From Anthoceros angustus (taxonomy: Eukaryota > Plantae > Anthocerotophyta): 64,000 nt of DNA. The translations under genes were made by a program, and so were the position numbers. The stretch spans positions 645,478 to 709,477 of the forward strand of contig MU008158.1 in assembly GCA_010909165.1 (NCBI GenBank), written 5' to 3'. The notes below the pieces were generated by a model. It saw only the letters and a list, made by a program, of their open reading frames with translations. It ran no database searches and was not told the origin of the DNA. Positions 753 to 41,420 of the stretch are shown piece after piece (positions within the stretch are counted from its first letter, which is position 1; every line of letters begins with the position of its first letter).

Positions 753-3700
753 ACCACCGGGCGAGTGTGGTCGCACCGCCAGTGGGCAGATCATCGGATA
801 GGTGGTCACCCACCGTGGTAGGTTGACCCCTGTGAGGGTGGGCTGTCCCTCCTGCTCTCCTCCGCGCCATCTTCCACCCTTGGCCACGGCCGCCTCCTCA
901 TCTCCTCGACTCCTGATTCCTGAGTCCATTTCTCACCGATGGCCTCATCAAAATTGAGGCCTCGGCTGCACTGCTGCAAAGACCTTTGCCATCATCATGA
1001 GGACCCAATGTCCTCCTCTGGCCAAACGCAAGATCTCATTGTTGGCCTTCAAAATCTATTGTGAGGTGAGCCCCCAAGCTATGATATTGCATTTGGAGAT
1101 CATCAACTCCGTGGGCCACTCTCCATCTTCACACCTACCTTGTAGGCGTCCTTGAGGTGGTCAATTCCCCCACCTTGACATGGAGGGTACATTTTCCTCC
1201 CTCACTTCCCTTGGGCCATCTTTGCCTCAAGGGCATAGTCCGCCCAAAATCTCGCTTTCTCACCACCATTCATGCACCACCTTCTTGTGCGCTCCTCCTC
1301 TTGGAACCTCCTTTGTTCCACTCGGCCAGCCGCTTGGCAAGTCTCTCCTTCTCCACTTGCCACCACTCTCGCCCAATTCTGCCACGATCTTGAGCTTTAG
1401 CTCCAGCTTCTCTTCCAAATTGAACCGATCCTTCGCACCTCTTCCATGTCCCGGATCTTGATGGCTTGGGTAGCCATCACTGCTCTCGCGTCCAATTGTT
1501 GGACCGCTACCTTCTCCTTCCGAGAGCCTCCGCTTTTGCCCTTTCTTGCTCTAATTGGGCAAAATGCTCCTCCGCCTGCCTCCAAGAATGCCGTTGCCCG
1601 AATGGCTCTTTCTTCGACAACCTTCCCTCGGACTTTCTCCGCCGCTCATCCATGAGGTCGTGTTGAGCTTCTCTGCCTTTCCAATTGCTTGGCTGCTCAT
1701 CGGACTCCATGGCCTCCAATTGCCATTTGGTCCCCGCCTCCTCCGGCCATGTCTTGAGGCTTTCACTTCCTCTTGGCATGCCCACAAGGAGGCTGCTCCC
1801 TAGCCCCTTCAAATCCACACGGCCGAGTGCTTCACAAGCACCCAAAGAATCTCCTAGGGGTCCTAATTCCCCTCCTTCTTTGCTGGAAATTTCCTCCGCT
1901 GGACCATCGGCGCGGTCCCTCACCGCCGCTCCATCCGCCTCCTCCCTGCGGGAGAGGTGGCCTCGCCCCACGGCCGCTTCTTCTCCTTTCCCTTCCCACC
2001 TCCGTGAGGCCCGCCTAGGGGTGCTCACCATGTGGGGGCCCCTCCGGTAGTCCGCCTACCTACCATGGTAGGTCGATCTACCACGAGTCCGCCCACCCCT
2101 TGGTAGCGCCTCTCACCGGGGTCATGGGTGCCTCCCTCTAGGCACAAATGAGATGGTGGGACTCCCCACCCTTGGGGGTCACACCCTCCCGTGGTAGTCC
2201 TCCTCTCATAGACTACCACCGCCTTCTCGGCCGCCTCGCTCCTCTCCCTCTTGCTCTGGGGGAAAGATTCCCACCCCGCAACCTTGTTGCCTCACATCCT
2301 TCTCCCTCTTCCTAGCATGCTTGTGGAGGTCCGCCCCACCCTTTCTTCCTCAATGCAAAGGCAAAGGCCTTTCCAAGCGGTTGGAGATGGATTATCTCAA
2401 GGATGCCAAGCATCTTCCAACTCCTTGCTTGTGAGAAGCCCTCCGCTTTCCCACAAATGCACCAAATAGGTGCATGGCAAGGCCCTTCCTCATCCACCGA
2501 ATTTGGCTTGAGGAGCTTTCTATGGTGGATGTAGGCCTCATACATGATGGTCCCCAACTGCTTGGCTCCCATGGAAATCTTCCACAAAAATTGGAGGAAG
2601 TTGCTGAAATAAGAAGTTGGTAATTCACCAACCCCAACACAATCTTGCAAAGAGCCTCCACTCTCCTTGATGCTCTCGCTTTCCAGCCATTCTTGGCGTC
2701 CTACCTCCATCCATCATGTCAAGGAACTCTGCGAATTCGAGAGGCCCTCTTCCTCCATTCGACCTTTCGAGGAGAGCACCGAGCTCTCCTCCTCTCCCAT
2801 ACACTGCCTAATGCTTGACGGCCCAAATGGGATCCTCGAGCATTCCTTCGAAGCTCGATTGATGGAGGTTGATGAAACACTCCTCAATCAATTCCAAATT
2901 GGTGTAGGCCCATTGGCCATACACCCATCCCAATTGGATGTTATCTTCCGCCACGAATCCACTAAATCGGGGTTGAGCTGCAAAACACGTGAATTGGGGC
3001 ATTAGCTCTCCCCTCGGCGGCCTGCCGCCTTCTTCTTCTTCCTCCTCGAGGAAGAACCCTGTGCTCCTTCCCTTGCTTTTCCATCGAGGCATGGTGCTTG
3101 GCTCTCCGCTTCAAAAGGAAGGAAATTACTTCCCAAGGAGAGCTTAAAATTCACACTCTCACCTCTTCCTTGGTGGTAGCACGCCTCAGACACGCGGCCC
3201 GGTTGAATCTTCCAGCCGCCAATTCCTCTGTCTGCGCCGGTGAAGTCCCCTTCCGCTTGACCTTCTCACCCCACACGCGCGCCTATTCCGCCTAAGCTGG
3301 CTCGCCCCTTTGCCAGCGGCTCCTCAGCCCGAGCTCAAAACCCACGCCCTGATGTGGATGCCTCCTTCCGCCTCCACCACGCTATGGGGTCTCTTTCGCT
3401 GCCTCCTTTGGCGATGAAATGATGGCGATGGCATTCTCCTTCCTCTTCTCCTCTCCTTACGCCCAACTCATGGCCGGCGGAGGAGGAGCTAAAGCACTTT
3501 GCCCTCCTTAGATGTCCGCCACCCGAGGCCTCAGAACCCTAGATTGGGTTTCATTTCCTAACCCTATTTTTCTATTTCCTACCCTATGCATATCCCCTAA
3601 TAATTATGTGGATATCTCCCCCACCGTGGTAGCTCACCTAGTCCACCACATGGTAGTCTCCTTTTCACTAATGTGGTGGCACTACTACGCCACCCTACCG
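753..3700 (-). mobile_element. Family A 3' internal region with decayed extra coiled-coil ORF (about 3010 to 1150)
   Basis: Frameshifted peptides MPQFT..EDNIQLGWVYGQWAYTNLELIEEC, KIVLGLVNYQ..NFLQFLWKI and KWQLEAMESDE..MATQAIKIRDMEE. Homologous to 12596-13140, 39925-41420 and 63157-64000. Confidence 0.8.
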
Positions 3701-13140: not shown

Positions 13141-13719
13141 AAATAAGCTGGGTTTGTTTTTTTTTCGTAGGTATGGAGTGTAAAATAAGGCGGAAAGGGA
13201 GGAAGAAGCACGGACGGTACTCGCATCGCACTCCGGACCGTAGGTAACGACCCTCGAGCCCACTGAGGACCTCCGACTACGCACCGAGTATCGGATGTCC
13301 GGACCGCCTCCGTCAAAACGGACAAGTACGCCGCAAAAGTAACCAGAAGTTGGAGCTGTGAGTTAGTACAGGGTGCCACGTGGACGGTCAGATCGAGGAG
13401 GACGCAAGGCATGCAGCATCAGACTGCAGGTTGCCGGCTATAGGCGGTGTATTCACGCCTCAGTACAGCGGGCGTAGTTAAAGTACGCTGCGTGGCCGAA
13501 GAAGCCGGAAGGCATGGCTGGCCAGTGCACTGCGCCACGGGCAGAAGGGATGCCTCCCGCCCGACTACTCCCGACGCGCCCGAGGTAGACCATTTCTCTG
13601 GACCTTGCGCGATTTTCAGCCTCGGCTCGCCACCCCGCCACCGGGCGCTATCTTCGGCACCCAGCACCCGCCGCTCACCTTCATGGTTGAGCAAAGAACG
13701 GGTAAGAGAGGGAGTGCCA

Positions 13720-29000: not shown

Positions 29001-30104
29001 CCTAAGATCATCCTTAAAGGATGTCGATCTACACCACTTATCCTTTCTATTCTCCTACTCATTTATGGTCTTTGACCATACCTAGTCCTCTTTTGGAATA
29101 GTGGCGTGTCCTTGGTGGATTGGCTCCTTGCCCCCTTTTGCTCGCCTTCCCATTCATCGTCTTCCAAGTGTGTGGGGCAAGTACAATTTGCCCCTTCCTC
29201 CATCTCATGCGGTGGCCTGATTCCTCCATCATCCGCGCCCCGCGCTCGGGGCGCCCTTCTTTCCGATCTCCGCCGGCGCTCCTTTTCAAGGGCACCCTAC
29301 GCGGTAGTCGGCGGACTCGGGGTGGTGACTTCTATCATGGTAGTCTGATCTTCATCTTTCTTCTTCTCCCCATCTGCGCTGCCTCTTGGGTTGGAATCTT
29401 CCGTGCTCCTTTCCTCCTGTTTGATTTGTCCATACCTATCATGGAGCATTCACAGATTTTCCTCCCCCAATTGTCGGCCGATTTTCACTAATCCCTCCGG
29501 GCCCTTTTCGCATCAGCCTCCTCTCCTGGCTCGGGCCCTTCCCTCGCTCGTGGGGTGAGGGAACTTCTCACCCCTCCTTCTTCCTTAACGGGTCGGATCC
29601 CGTCCCTGTCCTCCTCCGGTGGGACTGTTTCTCCCACCTCCTCTTCTATTCCTGCAGGGGGTGTGTCACCAGGCCCCCCGGCTCCTTCCCTTGACCCGGG
29701 CCTCAGCGGCGGCTCCCCGCAAGCCCAGCGCTCGCGCGCCCTACCCGTAGTCTGGCGGACTACGGCGTGTTGTCTACCACGGTAGTCAGCGGACTACCGT
29801 GGTGGTAGTGGTACTCATGTGGTAGGGTGACCCCACAGGGCGGGCTGTCCCCTCCTTGCTCCTCACGCCATCCTTTCTCACAGCCTTCGTCTCTTCTCCA
29901 CCTTGACTCCCAGTTCCTCGAGTCCATGTCACTTGTAGCCTCGTCAAAGTCGGCTTCGTACACTTCTGACTCCTTCTGTCATCATCATGAGGACCTATTG
30001 TCCTCCTCTTGGCCAACCGTATCACCTCATTGTTGGCCTTCAAAATCCTATTATGGAGGTGAGCCCCTAAGCTATGATACTGCATCTGGAGATCATCAAT
30101 CTCC
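29001..30104 (-). mobile_element. Family A 3' internal region, continuing at 39925
   Basis: 29780-30104 is homologous to 760-1110. The host sequence resumes after the DNA transposon. Confidence 0.8.
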
Positions 30105-30134
30105 AACACGATAATATTCATACCGGCGGAATAA
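30105..30134 (+). repeat. Left TIR
   Basis: AACACGATAATATTCATACCGGCGGAATAA. Confidence 0.93.
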
Positions 30135-30839
30135 TGTACGCCGGTTATGGAAAAATTGCCGCCGCTTGGTACTTTTCACACAGTTACTAATTCACTCCAA
30201 ACACGTCTCTTCGAAAGCACATGCGCCCGTGCCAAGCAATCATTGTGATTGAGATTTGAATTTCGTGTGCAAAGGGGTCTGCAATGAAGGTGCCAAGGTG
30301 CAGGGATGCTTGCGGACAAGCGGCAATGCTCAGTTATAAGTAGAGTGCGTCCGCTCAGATGTATTCAAAAACGGCCTCATGGCCAGACACAGAACAACTT
30401 GCTACTAGAAGATCCGGCGTGTCATCCACTCCAAAGACAACGGCCCATACGACATACAGTGCACAGCAACAGGAAAACGTTCTAGCCACCTAAGGAAGTT
30501 CACGGTCTGAAGATTCAACTGCACACAAACCGGCTTCACTATCAGGAACTACGGTGACGCTTTACGCGTTCTTCATCCTCTCGAAAGAGTCACGCCCATC
30601 ATCGCCTCGGGCGCCGCTGCCTTCCTTCCCGTAACTTCAGAGGTCAGGTGCCATACTTCTAGTGTCTGCCCTCATCCATGTGGTCTCCCTTCTTTCATTC
30701 GCTTGACCCTAGAGGCACAATTTGAGCCTTCCCAATATCCTTCTCGCCGACGCAAACCTCCTTGGCCTGAATGAGATGGACCACGACGATGCGGCTCATG
30801 TGTCACTCCTCCTCCGCATCCGTGCTTCATATCCATGTA

Positions 30840-31500
30840 CACGCTGGAATGAATTACGCACACCTCTTGTCCGCCTCGATAGAAATACAATTCGACAACA
30901 AGGCACCATTAAAGATGACCCACTACGCACATGCATCCAATATCCAGTCCCTTCCTTGGAGAATGTCTTGATAAGCTTCATCATCAAACCTAAAGGCGTG
31001 GTAGGGACAGACAACAAGTTTGTCAAGTGAATGATAAACCGACTTTTCACAAGTATGGTGGGCAATCACCGACCGACCATTATTGAAAGTGCCACGCAAA
31101 ACATTAGGTAACATGACAGCGCAACTCGAGCTTTTCTTCATTTACCGGTGACATACTCCACCGTATCAAACCCACCCTTGTCGTTGTTGACATTTGTCTT
31201 GTCCCACAAATGAAACAAGACCACCCCTCTGCACCACTTCCGCATAGGCTCCCCGCAATATGTGAATCTTCCACACCATGCATTATGATCATCCGAATCG
31301 CCAGATTCAACAAGTCATGGAAGGAATGCAAAACATTACCAACTTGCCAAATATCAAACCTTCCATCCTTTGGGCCCTTCTCGAATCCACGTGGGACATC
31401 CATCACAAGCAAAGAGTAACTCCTCTTCCTCACAAAACCTCGCATATCCGCACATCTCGAGCATGAATCGTCATCTTTTTCTCCGATGGGACGGTGGTTG
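30840..31500 (-). pseudogene. Beta-class N4-cytosine/N6-adenine DNA methyltransferase domain (frameshifted)
   Basis: In order: TIHARD; SYSLLVMDVPRG (motif IV, DPPY-like); HLWDKTN..GGFDTVEYV; CPY..PLGLMMKLIKTFSKEGDWILDACA.SGSSL (motifs X and I); NCISIEADKRC. Confidence 0.78.
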
Positions 31501-31899
31501 ACAATCCCTCTTCAATGTCTCTATCTCAAGCTCAACATCCTCCAAGCCCTTCCAAGTGTTGACCTCATAAATGAAGCTGAAAGTTTTGGGGCACTTGGTA
31601 AGGACTTCAATGTCTTTGTTGCTGCACAAAAAGCAGGATGCTTGTCAATATTGATGGAGGGAGGCGCGGCATGCCGGCGCCTCCCCGCACTTAGGGCCTC
31701 GCATCTAGACCGGGCGCGCGGGCGCCTCCTCGTGCAACCCCTATTATCTTGGGGTGAGGCATGCGCCGCCCCACCGCTGGGCGCGGCGCCCCTGCCGGAC
31801 AACAGCGGAGGAGGAGGAGGAGGCGCATGCGCGCCTCCTCCTCCCCGCCTGCATACCATATAAAGTTCTAAGAAACAAGAGAGTATGATAACATACCTT

Positions 31900-33130
31900 T
31901 CCCTCGAAAGCAGTCTGGAACCTGGCGACTACTTCGTCGGTGGAATGTTGTGGGTACTCTTGCCTCACCATCTCAAAAGATGAACATCCTAAGTGCTTCG
32001 CCATGGCCACTTGGATGATATGCAATTTCTTGCGCAATATAATTTCATCTGACATTCCCTTCAAATCCATAAGGCCAGTGAGAACTTTCTCAGTGGCACT
32101 AATAAGCATTTGTTGCCCGCTCTCCCCGCAGGAATACCTTGAAAGCAACGCCATGGCTTTGTCTGCATCTCCTTGGGCTTCACCAATATACCCTCAACTT
32201 GTTTCGTTTCTTCCGCTGCTTTCCGTTTGCCTTTGCTCTTTTTGCTCAATCCTGCTGCCACATGTTTCTTCTGTTCTGGCAAGTCACAAGCCTCCCACTT
32301 TGCAAAAATTTTGTCCACATTCTCCCATACCCTTCCTTCCAACTTCGCTATGCACAAGATGTGCGTCCTGTTGTCAACCTTGTTCTGTTTGTAGGCATCA
32401 TCTTCCCGTCCTTCATCATCTTCGATAAGACCCAATACCTTATACAGGTTGAACTTCCAATTCATGGACATATGCACGCCATCCCGCTTGGCTATAAGCA
32501 GTTCATCTCTGAGATATCTTACTTGCTCTATGAACGACATCTTCCGCCGTTTGTCAGACATTGTATTGTGATCAGTCGCCAAAACCCTCATTTCCTGTGT
32601 GGTCAGCCCACAATACACATGTGCCTCTATCCATTTGAAACGCTCTTTCACTGGTGATATGTCCGCCAAATGTTGCATTGCCGCAAATGTGTGGTTCCCG
32701 CCTAACACACCCATGATGTATTTCTTTGCCTCGAATTTTTCCACCAGTCCTCTAGATCATCACACTTGGGATCAATCATGCACAAAGGGGCAATACGCCC
32801 TCCTCAACTCGGCCCTTTCCAATCACGCGAGCCGATAATTAGTCCACGCTTCATCCACACGCCGAATCTGCGCATCCGGTTAGATAAGAGGCGGGCAGAT
32901 TCTCCAGCTTCCAACATCTGGACCACCTTCTTCGCATATCGCATCTCGAATTCGGTGAGGTAGTCCTCCTCGTGGAAGGAAGATTCCAACCTCTCTTCAT
33001 CTGCTGAAAGGTGCACTGTGGGAATGTCTCTCTGACATAGTTCTGTAGTCTTTGCTTTCTTCCGTATTTTACCATGTTCGGCTCCAAACTCTCGCTCTCG
33101 CCGATCCTCTTGCATCAAGACTGCTTCCTC
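31900..33130 (-). pseudogene. ParB/Sulfiredoxin-like domain and helical region, N-terminal to the methyltransferase
   Basis: ORF 32061-32744 reads KYIMGVLGGNHTFAAMQHL...AHVYCGLTTQEMRVLATDHN..RRKMSFIEQV, resembling ParB (idGxHRxxA ... l.eee...la..eN..R..ls.iE). Confidence 0.65.
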
Positions 33131-33559
33131 TTTCCATCCCGGCCTTGTATCGGAAATGACTAGCTCTCGCCAACAAATTACCATCCGGACTTGGGTGTCG
33201 TGTTGGTTCTGTTCACGTGCGCTTCGTTTGCCTTTCCTCCAGCCCTCCCGACAATCCAACGGCCGGGTCGATAGCCTCATAGCACCGGTATAGTAGAAGG
33301 GTGGCGCTGCCGGGATGGAAGGAGTCGGCGCATCCCCTTCCTTGCTCCGCCACATCCATAAACATGCCTGCATGGGGGTTGGGAGGACTCCACACTCGTA
33401 GTAGGCGCATGCCGGGCGCCCTCCTCTTCCTTGCTCCGCCACATCCATACATGCCCGGCCGAGGGTTGGCGGGGACTCCACACCTGGAATGGAGTCGGGC
33501 GCCGCATGCGCGCCACTGGCGGGTTATAAGGGACCGTGGCACAAGCATAGAGTCGGAGG

Positions 33560-34590
33560 CATGTCATAATCCATTATTAATTGCATCTCTAACCTCGGTT
33601 TCCAAGTCATCCCGCTTCTTCCATCATCTTCGGATTGTCCAAGGATGTCGGGCAATGGTCCATCATGCTCATCTTGGGCCCAGCTCCTCTTCCTCCGAGC
33701 TGCCCGAGAGGTCCTCCGTGATTTTGGGAGGGCTGCCCGGTTCGCGATGCTCATTTCTCTGGTGGTCCACGATAGATCGTGTGACAAAAGCACACATTGC
33801 TTATAGAAAGCCCTCCCACTGTTGACACACAAAACCCATAAGCCAACTCAGCCTACATGCGCGAAATGAAAAGCATTCAAGCACAAACAATGTTAGCCAA
33901 CCCGTCCATACGTGTTGATTCTGTTTAGCCTCTCGGGCGGTTGTCGGCATCCGGGAACACTTCTTAAGCTTGAACATCCCAAGGCCCACGGTGATAACCT
34001 TGAACTCCTCCGCACGAATTTCATCCAGCTTGGTGTGGCTTTGTTGTAAGGAGGATCTCGAATTCGCCCTGCGACAAATCCAGACTTGCCCATACAACCC
34101 AGCCAACTCTTGCTCACTGATTTTGGCTTAGCTGGTCCAAACCTCAGAACCTGTAAGGTGTCCATATGGTCAAGATCATCCGCCCGCTCTTGCAAAACCA
34201 CTCCTTCCCTAGACAATTAATCGCATCGATTGAGTTAGTCGCACGATGAGCATAGTTTCTTCCAAGTTGTATGGCGAAGGCACAGGATCGGGTTGCGTTT
34301 TCTTCTTCCCTTCAAGCCTCCTTGTCTTTCGTGGCCCGCCCGCCTCCCGTGTTAGCCGGGCTTTTGCAATTCCGAGCTCGATTTCTTCGCCGCCCCACCC
34401 ACATCCTTACACGCCTCCGATGCTGTTGTTGCGCTGGCCGCCACTTCCTTGTCGGGCCATTTGCCGCCATATCCACTCCTCCGCCTTCGAGTCTTCTTCG
34501 GTTTCTTCTGCCGCACAATCTCAGAAGGTGGTTCAGGCAGAGGCGCCACTAAGTCCTTCTTGCTCCGGAGAGCCCTCCCCGATGCCATGA
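33560..34590 (-). pseudogene. Unidentified Lys/Arg-rich ORF remnant inside the transposon
   Basis: MASGRALRSKK..RQKKPKKTRRRR and consecutive frameshifted segments. No domain recognised. Confidence 0.3.
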
Positions 34591-36879
34591 TTTCCTGCCA
34601 CAAGGAACGCGGACGCGCATCAACCAGCTGAAAGCATACGTATTAGAGTTCTCACTTTGTGAGGTGGATAGCAACAAATTGGGGAGAAGCACACCTCCTT
34701 CCGTGCGTGGGGATGATTCTCAAAGGCCCTACGAGCATCCACTGGCAAGCGTTGAATCACTCCCTCTTCTCGCCCGCTCGCAGGAGTCCGCATGCATACA
34801 AAGTTGAAGGGGACGTAAAGCCCGTTTTTCGTGTGGATGTGTGGGAAATGGTTTTAAAAGACCTTATACGCCCGGACAAGAAGTTAGGGTTCCCTTCATA
34901 TTTCTCACCGTAACCTCCATGGATTCGCGAACGTACATAATGCATAAATTCCATTTTAGGATAATGTCCTAACTACACCTCTTAATGGTGGTGTCGTTTT
35001 GGCGGAGGCGGCGCCATTACGATGGCGTGCATTGTTTGCCGTTATAGGTCTAGAACTTGTGCATTGAGCGGCGCCTTTCTCGTGCGTTGGTGGCGTTGAA
35101 GTTGGTGGCTTGACGTTATATTTCCCTTTTCCTGCAGGAGAACACACTTTCGTTTGTGTCGTGAAGTGGCATCACCGCAGAATGTTACAGAGACTCACCC
35201 GCATGATGCTGAAGTGAGCGATCTTTGTTGTATCCAATGCACTCCATGCAATAATGTTCCCTTGATGTTCTCCTCTAAACTTCGCTTTCATGTTGCGGGA
35301 AGGAGGACTTGTCATCATCGCAGCTTCAACCGAGAGCCGCAAGAAAAAGGAAACGCAATGCAAGATTGAATGCGTCCGATCCTCCTGTCCCGATGATGCC
35401 GCACAACACACCGCATTTCCAAATGGCTTGTGGGTAGTAGATGGTCGGTGTTAATTGCGTGTAGTTCTCCTCACGCATGCCAACAATGACTGAAGAGGCC
35501 AGTTCCCCGATCGTGTCACCAAATGCCGCGCTTGCATGAAGGTTGGAGGCGGGTCCAGACCTCACCAAGGATTCCTCGGTGTTCCTCGTACACCAAGGAA
35601 CATCAATTTGTATTCACCGTGGAGCGGAGTCCTAGTACGCCGCGCCATGAAGAACCGAATAGTTCCCACGCACTGCGCCGGGTTTGTTTCCAATTGAGGA
35701 AAGGAGGGTGTTCTGAAACCCTCGGCCGATGCACCTTTAGTGAGACAGAGGAAGGCGACCGCCCGACGCACGGTCATTCCACCCCAAACCCGAGCGAAAC
35801 ATTTGTGGCGCCACGGACATGCAATCCGTGGTTCGAGAAGGCGGGCAAGTGGAGTTCCTTTGTCGAAGAGCGACTCGGCGTTGTCACGGACTTCTAAGCC
35901 ATGCCGCAACAAGCAATGCGTCGTAATGTCTAAGGCCAATTTCCATGAGCAACGTTGCTTTTGCGAATGGGGAGGGCGAGCAAGAGACATTTCTTGCCCC
36001 TCCGGTCGTGGACTTACAGCCACCGAAGGACAAGGTCATCACGCATATAATGGGGGCGGCGCATTTGTTGTTTGCAAGCTTTTCAAGAGTATCGCATCGG
36101 CTCGAGGTACGAGGAGTTGAAGAGCGGTGTTATGCAATGCACCGTGGGGATGGGTCAAGAGTGAATCGCGACAACCATCTACACACCGGGAGCCGCGTTC
36201 GATGGATAGAGCCAAGTGATGGCGGAAAGGCTGCCAAACGTTGATGTGTTCCACCGCCGACACGCTCAAAGTTGGAGATCCGGGCCAGATCGCCGGATAT
36301 GACACGGTCTAGTATGCGTCGGTCGATCCCTATTTTCCGACCCTCGGAGGACCAACTTCCCGAAGGTTAGGATTCCAAAGTCTAATAGGTTTTCCACTTG
36401 CTCTTTATGTGAGGGACTGAAGCGCACCATCCGGAACACTTCCGACACAGCAGACCAAGGTTCGTTCTTCATATCCTGCTGGGTAGTGCATAGTTTCTAA
36501 GAACCATTCTGCTGAAGGATGCATAACTGCCCTGTTTACATGTCCTGTGCGGAGTGTATATGCATATGTGTCTTCTTAAAAAGGTGGGCCAGCGTGCTTG
36601 CCTCTTGTCGCAGAGGTGTGGCAATGTAGATACCAATGTGCAAGACTCACATAGGTTGCGTAGGCGGAAGAGTGCTTCCATTCGGGGCCCAGCACCCTTC
36701 AAGACATGCAGCACGCGCCCCCTCAAAGCGCCTCAGCGCCGGGAGGCGGCGGCCCCCAAAGCTTTTCCGCATGTCGGTCGGGGGGCGCATGCCGCTCCAG
36801 CGAGATTAACCGCACCCATGTTCATGTTACAGTAGACCGTGCAACAATATCGATATAATACTGTGTCTCCATTTTTGCA

Positions 36880-38430
36880 GAGGTTTACGAAGGAGCTTTG
36901 GCATCACAGTGCGACTAAGCAATGAGAGAGACAAAGCAAAAACATCGGTCCAAAAGTTATAGTCAGCCCCACAAGTATATGCATTGCTATCGATGGCATG
37001 GACGAAGAAGACAGCTCCCTCATTTCCTCCGTTATCCCAAAGAGTTGGCGAGGCATCACTTATTAATGTTCATGTGGTGGGATGTATGATACATAATTAC
37101 ACTTTCAAGGCGGGCATATTTACACTACGCTAATCACATAACGACGCCAATCTCACTATCCATATAATGTGATGTCATATTTTCTTACGAAGGGTGCTTC
37201 CTAAAGTTCTTTACCTCACCTTGATAATACTTGCGCGAGAACAAGAACCAGCTACTATTCGCGTACCTAAATATGCTCATCGACCTTGGTGTTCGTTAAA
37301 ATAAAGGTTGGGTTCCTATTGGTTGGTCATACCCATGATCGTTGATCAAATGTTTTCTTGTTTCTCAAGCTTCTTAGGCACAAAGAAGCGTTTACTATTG
37401 ATACACTTTGGAGATTTTGACAGCTTTCACCCCAACGCAAGTTAAAGTAATAGAGGTGGCGATTTTCGGTCTTATGTATGGCCCATTAAGAAGGGGACGA
37501 GAGGATATGCATACAAGGCGGCAAAGTGAACTTGAATAATCTTTCCTTCCAACATCAATTTAAAATCACGAGAGAGGAGCGAGACCGAGGTCAAGTTACG
37601 GTCATTCAAGTAAGCGACTCAACATCCCTCAATGGGAATCAAGATGGGTTGGAATTTTGAAATTTGTTCCATCAACCACGACCCACTCATGCCGCTAAGG
37701 CGAGAGACAAAAGGGTCAAGATGGAGGTCTTTCACCAACGGCGTGTGGCGACTTGAAGCATGGCTTCGAACTTGGCGGCGTATATCACGCCATCGGAGAG
37801 GTGTGGTGGAGGTTGTTTTGGTCACCAGAAGGAATTGCCACTATTGTGGAGAACAATATTGCTCTAGTGCTTAAACAACCGTGGAGGTGGTACAACAGAA
37901 GAGGTGGAGGCCACATGCCGCCACTTCAAGTGCCGGAGGAGGTTGTGCTTGATGAAGCATTACTAAGAGAAGTTCCTCAACGGGATATGTATTTGGGAGC
38001 TCACGATGCAAGTCGACAACATCAAGAAATAGAAAGGATGAATGGAGATGTCAAAGAGATAAGGAAGGGCATGTTCATTGCAACTCCATGCTCGGGAGAT
38101 ACACATAAGGGCTCGGATTGGGAAGGTGGAAAGCGTAGACTTGATTGTGCGAACCCATTTCTTATGGTCCACTACAGTGATGAGCAGATGCTTTTGAAGG
38201 GAAATATGTTGAGGAGTTCTTTGTTAGAGGACCGACAATCGACGATCGCGAAATGGGAAGAGAGTGGGAAGAGAAATTTACCCAAAACATTCGAAACTAT
38301 TTGTGAATAAGACTATTATTCTCTATTATGGGTTCAACCTCAATGCAAGAAAGCACCTTTACGCTCCGACAAGAAGGCTATTCGAGATAGAATGAATCAC
38401 CGACCTTATCTGCAGCTGAGAGGAGGATGA
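36880..38430 (+). pseudogene. DDD transposase, Sola1/DUF7869 type, catalytic region (frameshifted)
   Basis: IAIDGMD..LPHF, NDANLTIHI, LPKVLYL.LDNTCRENKNQLLFAYLNMLIDLGV and KIKVGFLLVGHTHD.VDQMFSCFS. Upstream exons probably lie in 35330-36700. Confidence 0.85.
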
Positions 38431-38674
38431 CCATGAAGTGGATGATGGATGTCCTTTGGTTGATGAAGGAATTCAGTGTCCCGAAGACTAGAGATTTTAG
38501 GGTTTTGTTTTCACGATAGAGTGAGCGTATGTTGGCTTCCGAGTTTCATACTCGGCCGACAGTTACTAGATAGGTTGGCTGAACACTGGTCGCACGTTTT
38601 TACGTCGCTATGTAATGAAGGCGTTTACCGGGTCCATGCTTTTACGTGGTCTACCAGTTGTCTTCCAAAAATAC

Positions 38675-39405
38675 CGTGGAGGCGCCGGCATGCTGGCGCC
38701 ATCATTGACAATACCCTAGCCTGCACAGTTCACTCCTAATATGTTTGAACATTTGTCACATGGGATGGCATTTCGCGGGTCCATGTGTTCCCTAGTTTCC
38801 AAGGTTAGTCACTTGTTTCTCGTTTGTAGCGGTATAAGCGGTGGGCGCCGGCATGCCGCGCCTCCACCGCCCCACATTCCACCTCATGTGTTTAAACGTT
38901 TTTGAAGGGATGGCATTTCATGGCCAGGCCCACGAGTTTGTGCAAGGTAAGTCACTTGTTTCTACCGCTTTGTAGAAAATATAGATAGTGGAGGCACCGG
39001 CATGCCGGGGCCTCCACCGACAATACCTAGCCCGCATTCGCTCCTCATATGTTTCAACGCTTTGTCGATGGGACGGCATTTCGGGTCCATGTGTCCCTAG
39101 TTCTTTCCAAGGTAAGTCACTTGTTTATCAGTGTAACAGGAGGCGCTGCATGCCGCGCCTCCACCGCCCCACAGCCCACTCCGCATATGTTACAACGTTT
39201 GTCGATGGGACGGCATTTCGGCAGGCCCACGAGTCGCCCCAAGGTAAGTCACTTGTTTCTACCGTCAGAAGATATAGATGGAGGCGCTGCATGCCGCGCC
39301 TCCATTGACAATACCTCCGCAGTTCAATATCCATATGTTTCGATGTTTGTCGGAAGGCGGAATTTCTCGAGTCCATGCGTCCAAAAGTTCTCTCTAAGGT
39401 AAGTC
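38675..39405 (+). repeat. Subterminal tandem array, about 150-bp unit x5, with a palindromic core
   Basis: Units start near 38678, 38840, 38990, 39139 and 39280. Each has a GGAGGCGC..GCATGC..GCGCCTCC-type core, a GGCATTTC-like motif and AAGGT(A/T)AGTCA. Confidence 0.85.
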
Positions 39406-39894
39406 AATCTCCTCACTTCCGAGACTTTTGTTCCCCTTGCCGATTGTTTTTCTTTGATAGCACCCATCCATGAAGTGTGTGAGACTGTACAAAACACACA
39501 CCAGGCATGGAAACGCAATTGCATGTCTTGATTCTGGAAGATGGAAACAGGACTTGCAGCATGTTGAATTTTCATTGTCATCTCCAATAGTTATTACTCC
39601 CTCATTAAAACGGTTTTCCAAAATCATATACCCTTTACGTCTTGAATGAATAGCAAGAGGCCTCTCTCGTGCCCTCTTCACGCCACCAAAGTCATGTATG
39701 GGCATTATTTCAAGGCAAATGTGTGCCCATCGAGGTTGTATATCCCTTTCCAGCCTATGTCATGACATTATCCCGGCTTCGCAAAAGAAACCAGTAATTT
39801 TGAAGCATTTTTTGTGGAAAATGGCAGGATCAGGCGTTTCGTTCCCATGTTCCCGCCGGTTACCAGTTTATTCATTGAAAAAGCCGCTTCCTGT

Positions 39895-39924
39895 TTATTC
39901 CGACGGTATGAATATTATCGTGTT
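39895..39924 (-). repeat. Right TIR
   Basis: Reverse complement is AACACGATAATATTCATACCGTCGGAATAA. Confidence 0.93.
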
Positions 39925-41420
39925 CTCCGTGGGCCACTCTCCATCCTCACACCTACCCTTGTAGGCGTCCCTTGCGGTGGTCAATTCTCCCACCTTGACA
40001 TGGAGGGTCACATTCTCCTCCCTTGCTTCTTTCAGCTGGTTGGCCATCCTTGCAAGGGCAATCCGCCCAAAATCTCCTTTTCCTCACTACTGATCCTGCA
40101 CCACCTTCTTGTGGTGCTCTTCCTCTTGGAACCTCCTTGCTTCTTTCAGGCTGGTTGGCCATCCTTGCACGAAGGGGCGTAATCACAAAATCTCCTTTTC
40201 CTCACTACATCCTGTTGCCACCTTCTTGTGGTGCTCTTCCTCTTGGAACCTCCTTTGCTCCAGCTCAGCCACTTGCTTGGCAAGTCTCTTCTTCTCCACT
40301 TGCCATTCACTTCCCTCTCGCTCTAGCTCTTGTACCTGCTGATCTTGAGCCTTTAGCTCCGCGCGCTTCTCTTCCAAATCAAATCGGGTCCTTCGCAATT
40401 CCTCTTCCATGTCCCGGATCTTGATGGCTTGGGTAGCCATCACCTGCTCTTGTGCATCCATTTGTTGGATCGCCACCTTCTCCCTTCCTAGGGCCTCTGT
40501 TTTGCCCTTTCTCTCCCGCTCTAGCTGGGCAAAATGCTCTTCCGCCTTCTGCCTCCACGAATCCCGTTGGGTTGTTGCCCGAATGGCTCTCTCCTCGGTC
40601 TGTGACAACCTCCCCTCTAGGACCTTCTCCGCTCTCCGCTGGTCCACGAGATCCCGCTGGAGTTTTTCCACAGCCTTCTCCAGCTTGGCTGCCTTCTCGT
40701 CGGACTCCATGGCTTCCAATTGCCATTTAGTCCCTGCTCTCCTCTCCGTCATTTCTTGGGCCTTGACTTCCTCCTGACTTGCCCACAAGGAGGCTGCTAG
40801 CTCCCTAGCCCCCTTCAAATTCACGCGGCTGAGTGTCTCACAAGCACTCAGCAATTCTCCTAGGGGTCCTAATTCCACCCCTACTGCCTTCTTGCTGGGA
40901 ATTTCCAGCTCCCTTGCGCTCCTCGGACCATCGCGCGGCGGTGGGGGTCCTCTCACCGTCGCCCCATCCGCCCTTCCTCCGAGCGCGGGTAGTGGCGGCC
41001 TAGGCGCCCTTGCATGGCTCTCGAGCCCTTCCCTTCCCCTACCGTCGCCTCTGGGGCGTGGGGTGCCCCCTTGGTGCTGCTCCCAGCGTAGATCGCGCCT
41101 GCCTACCGTGGTGGTACGCCTACCACAGTGATCGCCCACCCTTGGGTGGGGTGCCTCCCCTGGGGTGGGGCTGGGGTGCCTCTCTGCTAGGCACAAATGA
41201 GATGGTGGGGACTCCCCCCACCCTTGGGACTGTCACCCCTCCTGTGGTAGTCCTCCTCTCATAGACTACCATTCGGCCTTCCTCGGCCCGGTTCCTGTTC
41301 CTCTCCTCCCCCTTGCTCTTGTAGGGGAAAAGCTTCCCACTCTGGCAACCTTGTTGCCTCTACATCCTCCGCCCTTGCTCCTAGCATGCTTGTGGAGGTC
41401 GCCTCGCCCTGCTGAACGGA
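39925..41420 (-). mobile_element. Family A extra coiled-coil ORF (best-preserved copy is ORF 40183-41196)
   Basis: ELGPLGELLSACETLSRVNLKG..KWQLEAMESDEKAAKLEKAVEKLQRDL..MATQAIKIRDMEEEL, homologous to 1110-2340. Confidence 0.8.

What the first reader, a model, noticed from the sequence alone, without database searches (positions are those of the whole stretch)
30105..39924. Sola1-like DNA transposon carrying a ParB plus N4C/N6A DNA methyltransferase gene
Seen: a complete TIR element (30-bp TIRs, TSD CTCC, empty paralogous site near 1100) holds a DDD transposase on the + strand. A divergent - strand gene has a ParB/Srx-like domain upstream of a beta-class amino-methyltransferase. Established: ParB-MTase fusions are typical of phages and prophages. 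N4-cytosine methyltransferases of prokaryotic origin are known in a few eukaryotes (Marchantia, bdelloid rotifers), and DIRS-type retroelements carry MTase-like domains. Inference: this is a cut-and-paste transposon with its own DNA-modification module. It could mark or protect the element, counter host 5mC silencing, or act as a vehicle for moving 4mC/6mA methylases into plant genomes.
Basis: partly seen in the sequence, partly recalled or inferred. Interest (0 to 1): 0.95.

Follow-up and report, generated by a model that had tools for sequence, protein, structure and literature searches.

The report
Dead transposon carrying ParB-methyltransferase gene
This is a complete but dead copy of a plant cut-and-paste transposon whose family carries, besides its transposase, a conserved gene joining a bacterial-type DNA-binding (ParB-like) part to a bacterial-type DNA methyltransferase; the family may therefore mark its own DNA, an idea already proposed for red-algal transposons.

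Summary
A 9,820-bp insertion (30105-39924) has 30-nt inverted ends (29/30), a 4-bp duplication (CTCC) and a precise empty paralogous site at 1107-1110.

Both genes inside are pseudogenes, broken by stops and frameshifts. None of their 20 longest stop-free pieces hits Pfam, so they are identified through relatives.
- The + strand holds remnants of a DUF7869-type transposase.
- The - strand holds remnants of a ParB-like domain followed by a beta-class amino-methyltransferase.

The two-gene package is not a one-off capture. Between AACAC... inverted ends with 4-bp duplications, the same divergent pair occurs in the liverwort Riccia sorocarpa and the fern Adiantum nelumboides. Fused genes also occur in Ginkgo and Chara. 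Two Riccia copies show strong purifying selection (dN/dS about 0.07). Each lineage also carries its own palindrome in many copies, found only inside the element.

My reading is that the ParB-like part binds these palindromes and directs the methyltransferase to the element's own DNA. This is inferred, not shown.

The "Sola1" label could not be tested. The catalytic motif and the nearest solved enzymes favour N6-adenine over N4-cytosine.

This scan has reported the family before on other DNA of this genome. A 2025 red-alga preprint describes an analogous transposon cargo, so this is a new variant of a known kind.

The parts
1107..1110 (.). Empty paralogous target site (CTCC, unduplicated)
   Evidence: The left flank aligns up to 1110 and the right flank from 1107, a 4-nt overlap.
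30101..30104 (.). Left target-site duplication CTCC
   Evidence: Read directly from the sequence.
30105..30134 (+). Left terminal inverted repeat, starts AACACG
   Evidence: 30 nt, 97% complementary to 39895-39924. The same AACAC terminus is found in the Riccia and Adiantum elements.
30857..31511 (-). Remnants of the beta-class amino-methyltransferase domain. Motif IV reads DVPRGF at 31400-31383. Motif I reads DWILDACA at 30949-30926 and is followed by an in-frame TGA. The remnants are spread over three reading frames.
   Evidence: The family HMM's top hits among all 2,022 six-frame pieces are collinear here (E 2e-5, 0.043, 0.51, 2.3). tblastn to Adiantum, Ginkgo and Riccia proteins agrees.
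31649..31850 (.). Cluster of element-specific GC-rich palindromes around GCATGC, in the stretch between the middle piece and the motif-IV piece
   Evidence: Riccia copies carry their own palindromes in the corresponding intron.
31894..32121 (-). Helical middle piece of the ParB-methyltransferase gene, in another frame than the ParB piece
   Evidence: tblastn to P0001 residues 200-275 and P0029 residues 382-449. Related contigs lack single bases at 32050, 32057, 32175 and 32191.
32133..32744 (-). ParB-like domain piece (VLGGNHT box and the following helices)
   Evidence: phmmer found 54 relatives, best E 6e-34. The Riccia relative folds as ParB N-domain plus helix-turn-helix.
32760..32879 (-). 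Upstream part of the ParB-like N-domain (..MIDPKC..), in a different frame than the next piece
   Evidence: tblastn of P0026, P0027 and P0032 reaches 32879.
33333..33520 (.). Two palindrome-bearing repeat units upstream of the ParB-like gene
36327..37567 (+). Remnant of the DUF7869-type transposase core (IDGMD, LDNT/RENKN, GFLLVGHTHD), with at least 8 stops and at least 2 frameshifts
   Evidence: tblastn with Riccia DUF7869 reading frames gives E 4e-13 to 1e-12 within the element and 2e-11 to 5e-12 against the whole window. Those frames hit Pfam PF25273 at about 1e-53.
37699..38307 (+). Open 203-codon piece downstream of the core, probably the transposase tail
   Evidence: Weak match to the tail of the Riccia L002 transposase (E 0.014). 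No Pfam family.
38676..39406 (.). Subterminal array of about 150-bp units, each with a palindrome of the type GGAGGCGC-GCATGC-GCGCCTCC
39895..39924 (-). Right terminal inverted repeat
39925..39928 (.). Right target-site duplication CTCC

Best explanation
Shown:
- 30105-39924 is a full-length but dead copy of a streptophyte cut-and-paste DNA transposon family.
- The family is defined by AACAC... inverted ends, a 4-bp target duplication, a DUF7869-type transposase gene, and a divergently placed second gene.
- The second gene's product joins a ParB-like N-domain plus helix-turn-helix to a beta-class DNA amino-methyltransferase. Motif IV is D-x-P-Y-G-F and motif I is LDLxxGSGTT.
- The second gene is a conserved, selected part of the element. 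Each lineage carries many copies of its own 16-29-bp palindrome, found only inside the element: near the ends, between the two genes, and in the intron before the motif-IV exon.

Inferred mechanism:
- The ParB-like part recognises these palindromes, as ParB, KorB and Noc recognise their palindromic sites.
- This brings the fused methyltransferase to the element's own DNA, which it marks, most likely with N6-methyladenine.
- The mark would either keep the two-way promoter region from being silenced or let the element tell replicated (half-methylated) DNA from unreplicated DNA.

In this copy nothing works. Only the inverted ends are intact.
For: Boundaries and empty site.

Transposase remnant.

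ParB-like piece and fused relatives with Pfam N6_N4_Mtase (Ginkgo E 8e-18, Riccia, Chara, Adiantum, environmental contigs).

ParB fold of the Riccia relative:
- The 12 Foldseek hits with E <= 0.001 are all ParB or Noc, best E 2.8e-5; Spo0J and KorB follow at 3e-3 to 7e-3.
- VIA Z is 10.0 at rmsd 2.3 A over 98 residues.
- The DNA-binding part matches Spo0J-parS and Noc at Z 5.1-5.4.

Methyltransferase remnants in the window.

Same package inside AACAC ends with 4-bp duplications:
- Riccia L001, duplication TAGA.
- Adiantum L003, duplication CCAA.

Purifying selection between Riccia copies:
- dN/dS 0.07 overall and 0.025 in the ParB part.
- In the unannotated motif-IV exon, pN is 0.038 against pS 0.64.

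Palindromes only inside the elements:
- About 11 in the window.
- 18 in Riccia L001 element 1.
- 11 in Adiantum.

Palindrome conservation: two Riccia copies with nearly identical ParB parts share the same palindrome although their synonymous sites are saturated. Copies with distant ParB parts have other palindromes.

Nearest solved methylases are the N6-adenine enzymes M.RsrI, CcrM, M.MboIIA and DpnA.

The family is multi-copy in a DNA run.
Against: - No methylation, binding or expression data exist. No RNA run holds the stretch.
- Sequence profiles do not call the N-terminal part ParB. Its GxxR box reads GGNH(S/T), without the arginine, so it is unlikely to work as a canonical CTP-dependent ParB clamp.
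- The first proline of the catalytic DPPY motif is replaced in land-plant copies (DIPY, DAPY, DIPH), so activity is not assured.
- The palindromes could equally be transposase binding sites.
- dS between the Riccia copies is saturated, so the dN/dS ratio is only approximate.
- The window copy itself gives no Pfam hit.
Confidence: 0.6

Rival explanations
1. The second gene's product is only a sequence-specific DNA-binding regulator, like the ParB-family repressor KorB. It would control the element's divergent promoters or help pair its ends. On this view the methyltransferase part is a catalytically dead scaffold.
For: - Motif IV departs from DPPY in all land-plant copies (DIPY, DAPY, DIPH).
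- Animal relatives of the ParB-like domain show no recognisable methylase by Pfam.
- The palindromes are densest between the two genes, which is where an operator would sit.
Against: - The motif-IV exon is the most strongly conserved coding stretch between the Riccia copies (pN 0.038 against pS 0.64).
- The D, the second P and the Y of motif IV, and the SAM-binding GSG motif, are kept from Chara to ferns.
- An environmental relative has a canonical DPPYGF motif.
Confidence: 0.2
2. The palindromes are binding sites of the transposase (subterminal repeats, as in CACTA, hAT and Mutator elements). The ParB-methyltransferase would then act elsewhere: genome-wide, on other elements, or on RNA.
For: - Arrays lie close to both ends: window 38676-39406 and Riccia 3246-3507 and 13409-13530.
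- The co-variation seen with the ParB part would equally fit the transposase, which diverges in parallel.
Against: - Many palindromes lie far from the ends, in the intergenic region and in one conserved intron of the ParB-methyltransferase gene.
- 16-bp perfect palindromes are the typical site type for ParB-family helix-turn-helix dimers (established knowledge).
- The DNA-binding part of the model matches the ParB and Noc DNA-binding domains.
Confidence: 0.15
3. The methyltransferase gene in this window is a one-off capture or a nested insertion, unrelated to the transposon's own biology.
For: Only one copy lies in this window, and both genes are decayed.
Against: - The same divergent gene pair lies inside AACAC ends with 4-bp duplications in a liverwort and a fern.
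- The gene is under purifying selection.
- No extra inverted ends or duplications flank the gene inside the element.
Confidence: 0.03

Closest known systems
Accessory-gene cassette of red-algal Plavaka, Zisupton and Mutator transposons (PAG2, PAG3), Bostrychia moritziana preprint, bioRxiv 10.1101/2025.02.11.637652
   Same: These are DNA transposons carrying a PF01555 DNA methylase and a ParB-like DNA-binding domain, with arrays of inverted repeats inside the element. The authors propose that the ParB-like protein binds and modifies its own transposon.
   Different: - In red algae the two domains sit in separate genes with other partners: methylase plus SET, and ParB-like plus 2OG oxygenase. 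A third gene is also present.
- The red-algal carriers are EnSpm/Plavaka, Zisupton or Mutator elements.
- Here one gene fuses the ParB-like part directly to the methylase. No SET or oxygenase domain was found.
- The transposase here is of DUF7869 type and the hosts are streptophytes.
- Homology between the red-algal and streptophyte domains was not tested, because no red-algal sequences were available.
ParB-HTH fused 'chlorophyte-type Dam' methylases of chlorophytes and chytrids (Iyer, Zhang and Aravind 2016, PMC4738411)
   Same: These are eukaryotic proteins joining a ParB-type DNA-binding part to a bacterial-type adenine methylase.
   Different: That methylase belongs to the M.EcoKI/M.TaqI-like group. 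This one is a circularly permuted beta-class enzyme, nearest to M.RsrI, CcrM and M.MboIIA. No transposon context was described there.
Phage and prophage ParB-methyltransferase fusions and ParB-terminase loci
   Same: They share the same pair of domain families. The methylase part of the Ginkgo relative hits phage methylase families (phrog_67 at 1.5e-27; about 26% identity to phage genes).
   Different: - The ParB-like part hits no phage family at E <= 0.01.
- It is long enough to include a helix-turn-helix DNA-binding domain.
- It lacks the arginine of the GxxR box.
- The gene has introns and sits in a eukaryotic transposon.
Sola1 group of the Sola superfamily (Bao, Jurka and Kapitonov 2009)
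   Same: It has a 4-bp target duplication and a transposase with three conserved acidic motifs. Sola1 is reported from a moss, Physcomitrella.
   Different: No Sola1 reference sequence or terminal consensus could be compared. The 2009 paper and the Yuan and Wessler paper are not held. The 4-bp value for Sola1 is from memory.
Marchantia MpDN4MT1a/b and bdelloid N4CMT (eukaryotic N4-cytosine methylases of bacterial origin)
   Same: These are beta-class amino-methyltransferases of prokaryotic type in eukaryotes.
   Different: They carry a (T)SPPY motif and no ParB part, and they are host genes. This family has D-x-P-Y.
VANDAL (Mutator) anti-silencing protein VANC of Arabidopsis; Dam control of IS10/Tn10 and Tn5 in bacteria
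   Same: These are functional analogies only. In VANDAL, an element-encoded protein binds element-specific motifs and changes the element's own methylation. In IS10 and Tn5, adenine methylation of the ends and promoter couples transposition to replication (established knowledge; VANDAL is cited).
   Different: VANC is not a methylase and removes 5mC. IS10 and Tn5 use the host's methylase rather than one of their own.

Membership tests
Cut-and-paste (TIR) DNA transposon | Terminal inverted repeats, a target-site duplication and a precise empty site | tested here: met
DUF7869 (PF25273) transposase family | Pfam profile hit on the protein | tested here: inconclusive
   The 10 longest + strand pieces give no Pfam hit; the short pieces that carry the core motifs were not scanned. 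They align to Riccia reading frames (E 4e-13 to 1e-12), and those frames hit PF25273 at about 1e-53.
Sola1 (Sola superfamily) | 4-bp target-site duplication | tested here: met
   CTCC in the window, TAGA in Riccia and CCAA in Adiantum. That Sola1 makes 4-bp duplications is from memory.
Sola1 (Sola superfamily) | Transposase homologous to reference Sola1 DDD transposases | not testable with these tools
   No Repbase sequences were available, and the defining papers are not held.
ParB/Srx superfamily | ParB N-domain fold | tested here: met
   Tested on the Riccia relative P0029 residues 105-465 (pLDDT 84). The 12 Foldseek hits with E <= 0.001 are all ParB or Noc (Spo0J and KorB rank just below). 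VIA Z is 10.0 at rmsd 2.3 A over 98 residues. The truncated window piece alone gave no match.
ParB/Srx superfamily | Sequence profile match (Pfam ParBc or solved ParB sequences) | tested here: not met
   The only signal was DUF6551 in 2 of 25 members at E 0.005.
ParB/Srx superfamily | GxxR (arginine) box of CTP-binding ParB proteins | tested here: not met
   The family box reads GGNH(S/T). Arginine is present in only one relative, P0033.
ParB/Srx superfamily | Helix-turn-helix DNA-binding domain after the N-domain | tested here: inconclusive
   Model residues 167-309 match Spo0J-parS and the Noc DNA-binding domain at Z 5.1-5.4.
Beta-class N6/N4 DNA amino-methyltransferase (PF01555) | Pfam hit above the gathering score | tested here: met
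   Met by the relatives: Ginkgo 65.7 bits, and P0080, P0082, P0048 and P0009. It is not met by the window pieces.
Beta-class N6/N4 DNA amino-methyltransferase (PF01555) | Motif order IV before I (circular permutation) | tested here: met
   In the window, motif IV lies at 31400 and motif I at 30949 on the - strand.
Beta-class N6/N4 DNA amino-methyltransferase (PF01555) | Catalytic motif (D/N/S)PP(Y/F/W) | tested here: inconclusive
   The environmental relative has DPPYGF. Riccia has DIPYGF, Adiantum DAPYGF, Chara DFPYG and DLPYG, and Ginkgo DIPHGY. The window has DVPRGF, which is degenerate.
Phage ParB-methyltransferase fusions | Both domains most similar to the phage fusion proteins | tested here: not met
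   Only the methylase part hits phage families.
Red-algal PAG2/PAG3 transposon cassette | Methylase fused to SET, ParB-like part fused to 2OG oxygenase, as separate genes | tested here: not met
   Pfam finds only PF01555 in the relatives, and the two domains are fused in one gene. The red-algal architecture is as described in the paper.
N4-cytosine methylases of the MpDN4MT1 type | TSPPY catalytic motif | tested here: not met
   The family has D at that position.

The most novel reading that the evidence does not exclude
Streptophyte genomes from stoneworts to ferns and Ginkgo may harbour a transposon lineage with an active self-addressed DNA-marking system. A ParB-like reader would bind lineage-specific, parS-like palindromes and deliver a fused adenine (or N4-cytosine) methyltransferase to the element itself. 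That would give land plants a transposon-borne 6mA/4mC mark that either opposes silencing or times transposition to replication.
Probability: 0.3. Interest if true: 0.85.

Novelty: new variant of a known kind. Interest (0 to 1): 0.6.

Why it matters
Whether 6mA and 4mC exist and matter in plant DNA is disputed, and few enzymes are known that could write them. Here is a conserved, selected, transposon-borne candidate writer with a built-in addressing domain and obvious candidate target sites. This makes the question directly testable in Riccia, Adiantum or Ginkgo, through long-read methylation calls on family copies, recombinant enzyme assays and binding assays. It also extends the idea recently proposed for red-algal Plavaka elements, that a transposon brings its own DNA-modification module and its own address labels, to a different transposase family and to the land-plant lineage. 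The window's own copy is only a fossil of this system.

Tried and rejected
- Pfam on the 20 longest reading-frame pieces of the element gave no relevant hit. The motif-IV piece alone also gave none.
- The word-indexed protein search with the ParB piece gave nothing, probably because of its length filter. With the Riccia protein it found only a paralogue. With a family alignment it found only Ginkgo paralogues.
- Folding the truncated window piece alone gave no fold match. The N-terminally extended Riccia relative was needed.
- Profiles of the ParB-like region against solved-structure sequences gave nothing.
- The transposase against solved-structure sequences gave nothing.
- The window's TIR was not found in the two Riccia loci held at that point, L001 and L002. 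Only the AACAC terminus is shared with the Riccia and Adiantum elements.
- 'DUF7869' appears in no paper. The Sola papers are not held, and a literature search for Sola1 features did not help.
- No DUF7869 remnant was found near the Chara gene at E 1e-5.
- No RNA run holds the stretch, so expression and splicing could not be examined.
- A link to the Marchantia N4 methylases was rejected on the catalytic motif.
- I did not build a joined or repaired reading frame of either window gene.


Full report
**Boundaries**

The inverted repeat search finds one long-range pair that frames the finding exactly. The arms are 30105-30134 and 39895-39924, 30 nt each with 29 complementary positions. CTCC stands immediately outside both arms.

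A diverged paralogue of the flanking sequence lies near the start of the window. The left flank aligns to 815-1110 (75% identity) and the right flank to 1107-1313 (83% identity). The two alignments overlap by exactly the four bases CTCC. This is a textbook filled-versus-empty site pair, so a 9,820-bp cut-and-paste insertion with a 4-bp duplication is real. No second copy lies in the window.

**The two genes in this copy are wrecks**

None of the 20 longest stop-free pieces on the two strands hits a relevant Pfam family. Reading the frames by eye and aligning relatives shows why.

On the + strand:
- The transposase core motifs are present: IAIDGMD, LDNT.../...RENKN and GFLLVGHTHD.
- They alternate between two frames and carry at least eight in-frame stops between 36859 and 37567.

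On the - strand:
- The ParB-like N-domain is split by a frameshift near 32750.
- The next piece (32121-31894) is in another frame.
- The methyltransferase region (31511-30857) is spread over three frames.
- Motif IV reads DVPRGF, and motif I (DWILDACA) runs into a TGA.

A DNA run that holds many short, related contigs shows other copies lacking single bases at 32050, 32057, 32175 and 32191. The shift near 32121-32190 is therefore a lesion of this copy and not an intron.

All pieces were searched apart.

**Identification through relatives**

An exhaustive phmmer search with the 231-residue ParB-like piece found 54 relatives, the best at E 6e-34. The full-length ones carry a C-terminal Pfam N6_N4_Mtase domain:
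- Ginkgo Gb_37443 (E 8e-18) and four further Ginkgo models.
- Riccia sorocarpa proteins.
- A Chara braunii model that holds two ParB-like units and two methylase units, so it probably merges two copies.
- Adiantum nelumboides proteins.
- Intron-less environmental reading frames.

A family HMM of the methylase part was searched against all 2,022 six-frame pieces of the window. Its four best hits all fall on the - strand of the element, in the order of the profile: E 2e-5 for the motif-IV piece, then 0.043, 0.51 and 2.3.

Riccia reading frames that hit Pfam DUF7869 at about 1e-53 align to window 36327-37567 at E 4e-13 to 1e-12 (2e-11 to 5e-12 against the whole window).

**Is the N-terminal part ParB-like?**

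Sequence profiles say nothing either way. A model of the truncated window piece found no fold.

A model of the N-terminally extended Riccia relative (361 residues, pLDDT 84) is clear:
- All 12 Foldseek hits with E <= 0.001 are ParB or Noc, best E 2.8e-5; Spo0J and KorB follow at 3e-3 to 7e-3.
- The second-look aligner gives Z 10.0 at rmsd 2.3 A over 98 residues for the ParB N-domain.
- It gives Z 5.1-5.4 for the following helices against the parS- and NBS-bound DNA-binding domains.

The family's GxxR box reads GGNH(S/T), without the arginine. I would therefore not expect a canonical CTP-driven clamp.

**The methyltransferase**

The motif order is IV before I, which marks the beta class. Motif I is LDL(F/C)(S/A)GSGTT. 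Motif IV varies as follows:

| Source | Motif IV |
|---|---|
| Environmental relative | DPPYGF |
| Riccia | DIPYGF |
| Adiantum | DAPYGF |
| Chara | DFPYG and DLPYG |
| Ginkgo | DIPHGY |

The nearest solved enzymes are M.RsrI, CcrM, M.MboIIA and DpnA, all N6-adenine methylases. Phage methylase families match only the methylase part. Marchantia's N4-cytosine enzymes carry TSPPY. I therefore favour adenine over N4-cytosine, without proof.

The Riccia gene models skip the motif-IV exon. It is an open, frame-continuous stretch in both L001 and L006.

**The package is ancestral to the element**

- In Riccia locus L001 the ParB-methyltransferase gene and a DUF7869 gene lie head to head. They sit between ends that start AACAC(C/T) and are flanked by TAGA.
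- In Adiantum locus L003 a DUF7869 remnant lies head to head with the fused gene. The ends start AACACTCGG and are flanked by CCAA.
- The window's ends start AACACG.

Two Riccia copies (P0029 and P0056) differ at most synonymous sites (pS 0.64) but at few non-synonymous ones. dN/dS is 0.07 overall, 0.025 in the ParB part and 0.16 in the methylase part. The unannotated motif-IV exon has pN 0.038 against pS 0.64. Synonymous sites are saturated, so the ratios are approximate, but purifying selection is plain.

**Palindromes**

Eleven of the 13 GCATGC sites inside the window element sit in GC-rich palindromes of the type GGAGGCGC-GCATGC-GCGCCTCC. None of the 20 sites outside does.

| Element | Palindrome | Copies (all inside) |
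|---|---|---|
| Riccia L001, element 1 | TGTATGCGCGCATACA | 18 |
| Adiantum L003 | TGTATTCCAGAATACA | 11 |
| Riccia L002 | 29-bp palindrome around CATGCG-N-CGCATG | 10 at <=2 mismatches (14 at <=3) |
| Riccia L001, second element | GTCCATGAG-N-CTCATGGAC | 6 |

In the elements whose ends and gene models are mapped (window, Riccia L001 and L006), the palindromes lie near the ends, upstream of or between the two genes, and in the intron or gap before the motif-IV exon. In Adiantum 10 of 11 lie between the genes.

Riccia L006 has a ParB part nearly identical in protein to that of L001, yet its synonymous sites are saturated. It keeps the same palindrome, in 11 copies. The palindrome is therefore conserved, and it changes where the ParB-like part changes. 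The transposase changes in parallel, so this does not separate the two candidate readers.

**Mechanism**

- Shown: the anatomy, its conservation and the selection acting on it.
- Inferred: the ParB-like helix-turn-helix binds the palindromes and brings the fused methylase to the element's own DNA.
- Open: what the mark does. It could act against silencing at the two-way promoter. It could also sense half-methylated DNA after replication, as Dam methylation does for IS10 and Tn5 (established knowledge).
- Rivals: a KorB-like regulator with a dead methylase, or palindromes that serve the transposase.

**Prior knowledge**

- Iyer, Zhang and Aravind (PMC4738411) list ParB-HTH fusions to a different methylase group in chlorophytes and chytrids. 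They also list phage ParB-locus-derived methylases in haptophytes.
- A 2025 preprint on the red alga Bostrychia (bioRxiv 10.1101/2025.02.11.637652) describes Plavaka transposons with accessory genes for a PF01555 methylase plus SET and for a ParB-like domain plus a 2OG oxygenase. These come with tandem inverted-repeat arrays, and the authors propose self-binding and self-modification.
- I found no paper on the fused gene, on DUF7869 elements, or on streptophyte hosts.
- This scan has already reported the family on at least eight other stretches of this genome. My independent tests agree with those notes on Riccia, Chara, environmental contigs and the palindromes.

**Superfamily**

No reference could be compared, so the label stays open.

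**Verdict**

This is an ordinary dead copy of an unusual family. The family is a new variant of a kind first sketched in red algae. It offers a direct test of whether a plant transposon writes a non-5mC mark on itself.

Noticed in passing
L001:11958-12389 and L006:13099-13521: The public Riccia sorocarpa gene models for the ParB-methyltransferase genes (KAL3696720 and its paralogue) skip an open, frame-continuous exon that holds the catalytic motif (YTLAIADIPYGF). The exon is highly conserved between the two copies (pN 0.038 against pS 0.64).
   Followed up: yes
proteins P0032/P0073 (Saccoglossus), P0037/P0076 (Diadema), P0039/P0041/P0078 (Owenia), P0049 (Mercenaria), P0006/P0025 (Armadillidium): The ParB-like domain family also occurs in marine invertebrates and an isopod, in proteins of about 450-650 residues without a Pfam methylase hit. 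One Saccoglossus protein weakly matches the middle of the family's methylase profile (E 1e-5). DUF7869 clusters also include molluscs, so the element lineage may extend to animals.
   Followed up: partly
window 29819-30104 plus 39925-40524, and window 815-1546: The transposon sits in a sequence that is itself repeated in the window at 75-83% identity. That sequence contains short internal repeats of about 114-120 bp (40021-40255) and lies beside an open 337-codon coiled-coil reading frame on the - strand (40186-41196) with no Pfam family.
   Followed up: partly
L004 (Chara braunii GBG86584, 1,825 residues): The Chara gene model spans 29.5 kb and holds two ParB-like and two methylase units, so it probably merges two element copies. 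No DUF7869 remnant was detected nearby at E 1e-5.
   Followed up: partly
L007 (Logan contig of run SRR33208241): The closest relative of the window's ParB-like piece (38% identity) lies on a 2.4-kb contig of an unnamed sample. It too is interrupted just before the GGNHS box, and its reading frame runs on past the position where the window's coding match to relatives stops. It is probably genomic DNA of another decayed copy.
   Followed up: partly
window 37699-38307 (+): Amid the wrecked transposase, a 203-codon stretch downstream of the core stays open. It has only a weak match to the tail of a Riccia transposase (E 0.014) and no known domain.
   Followed up: partly
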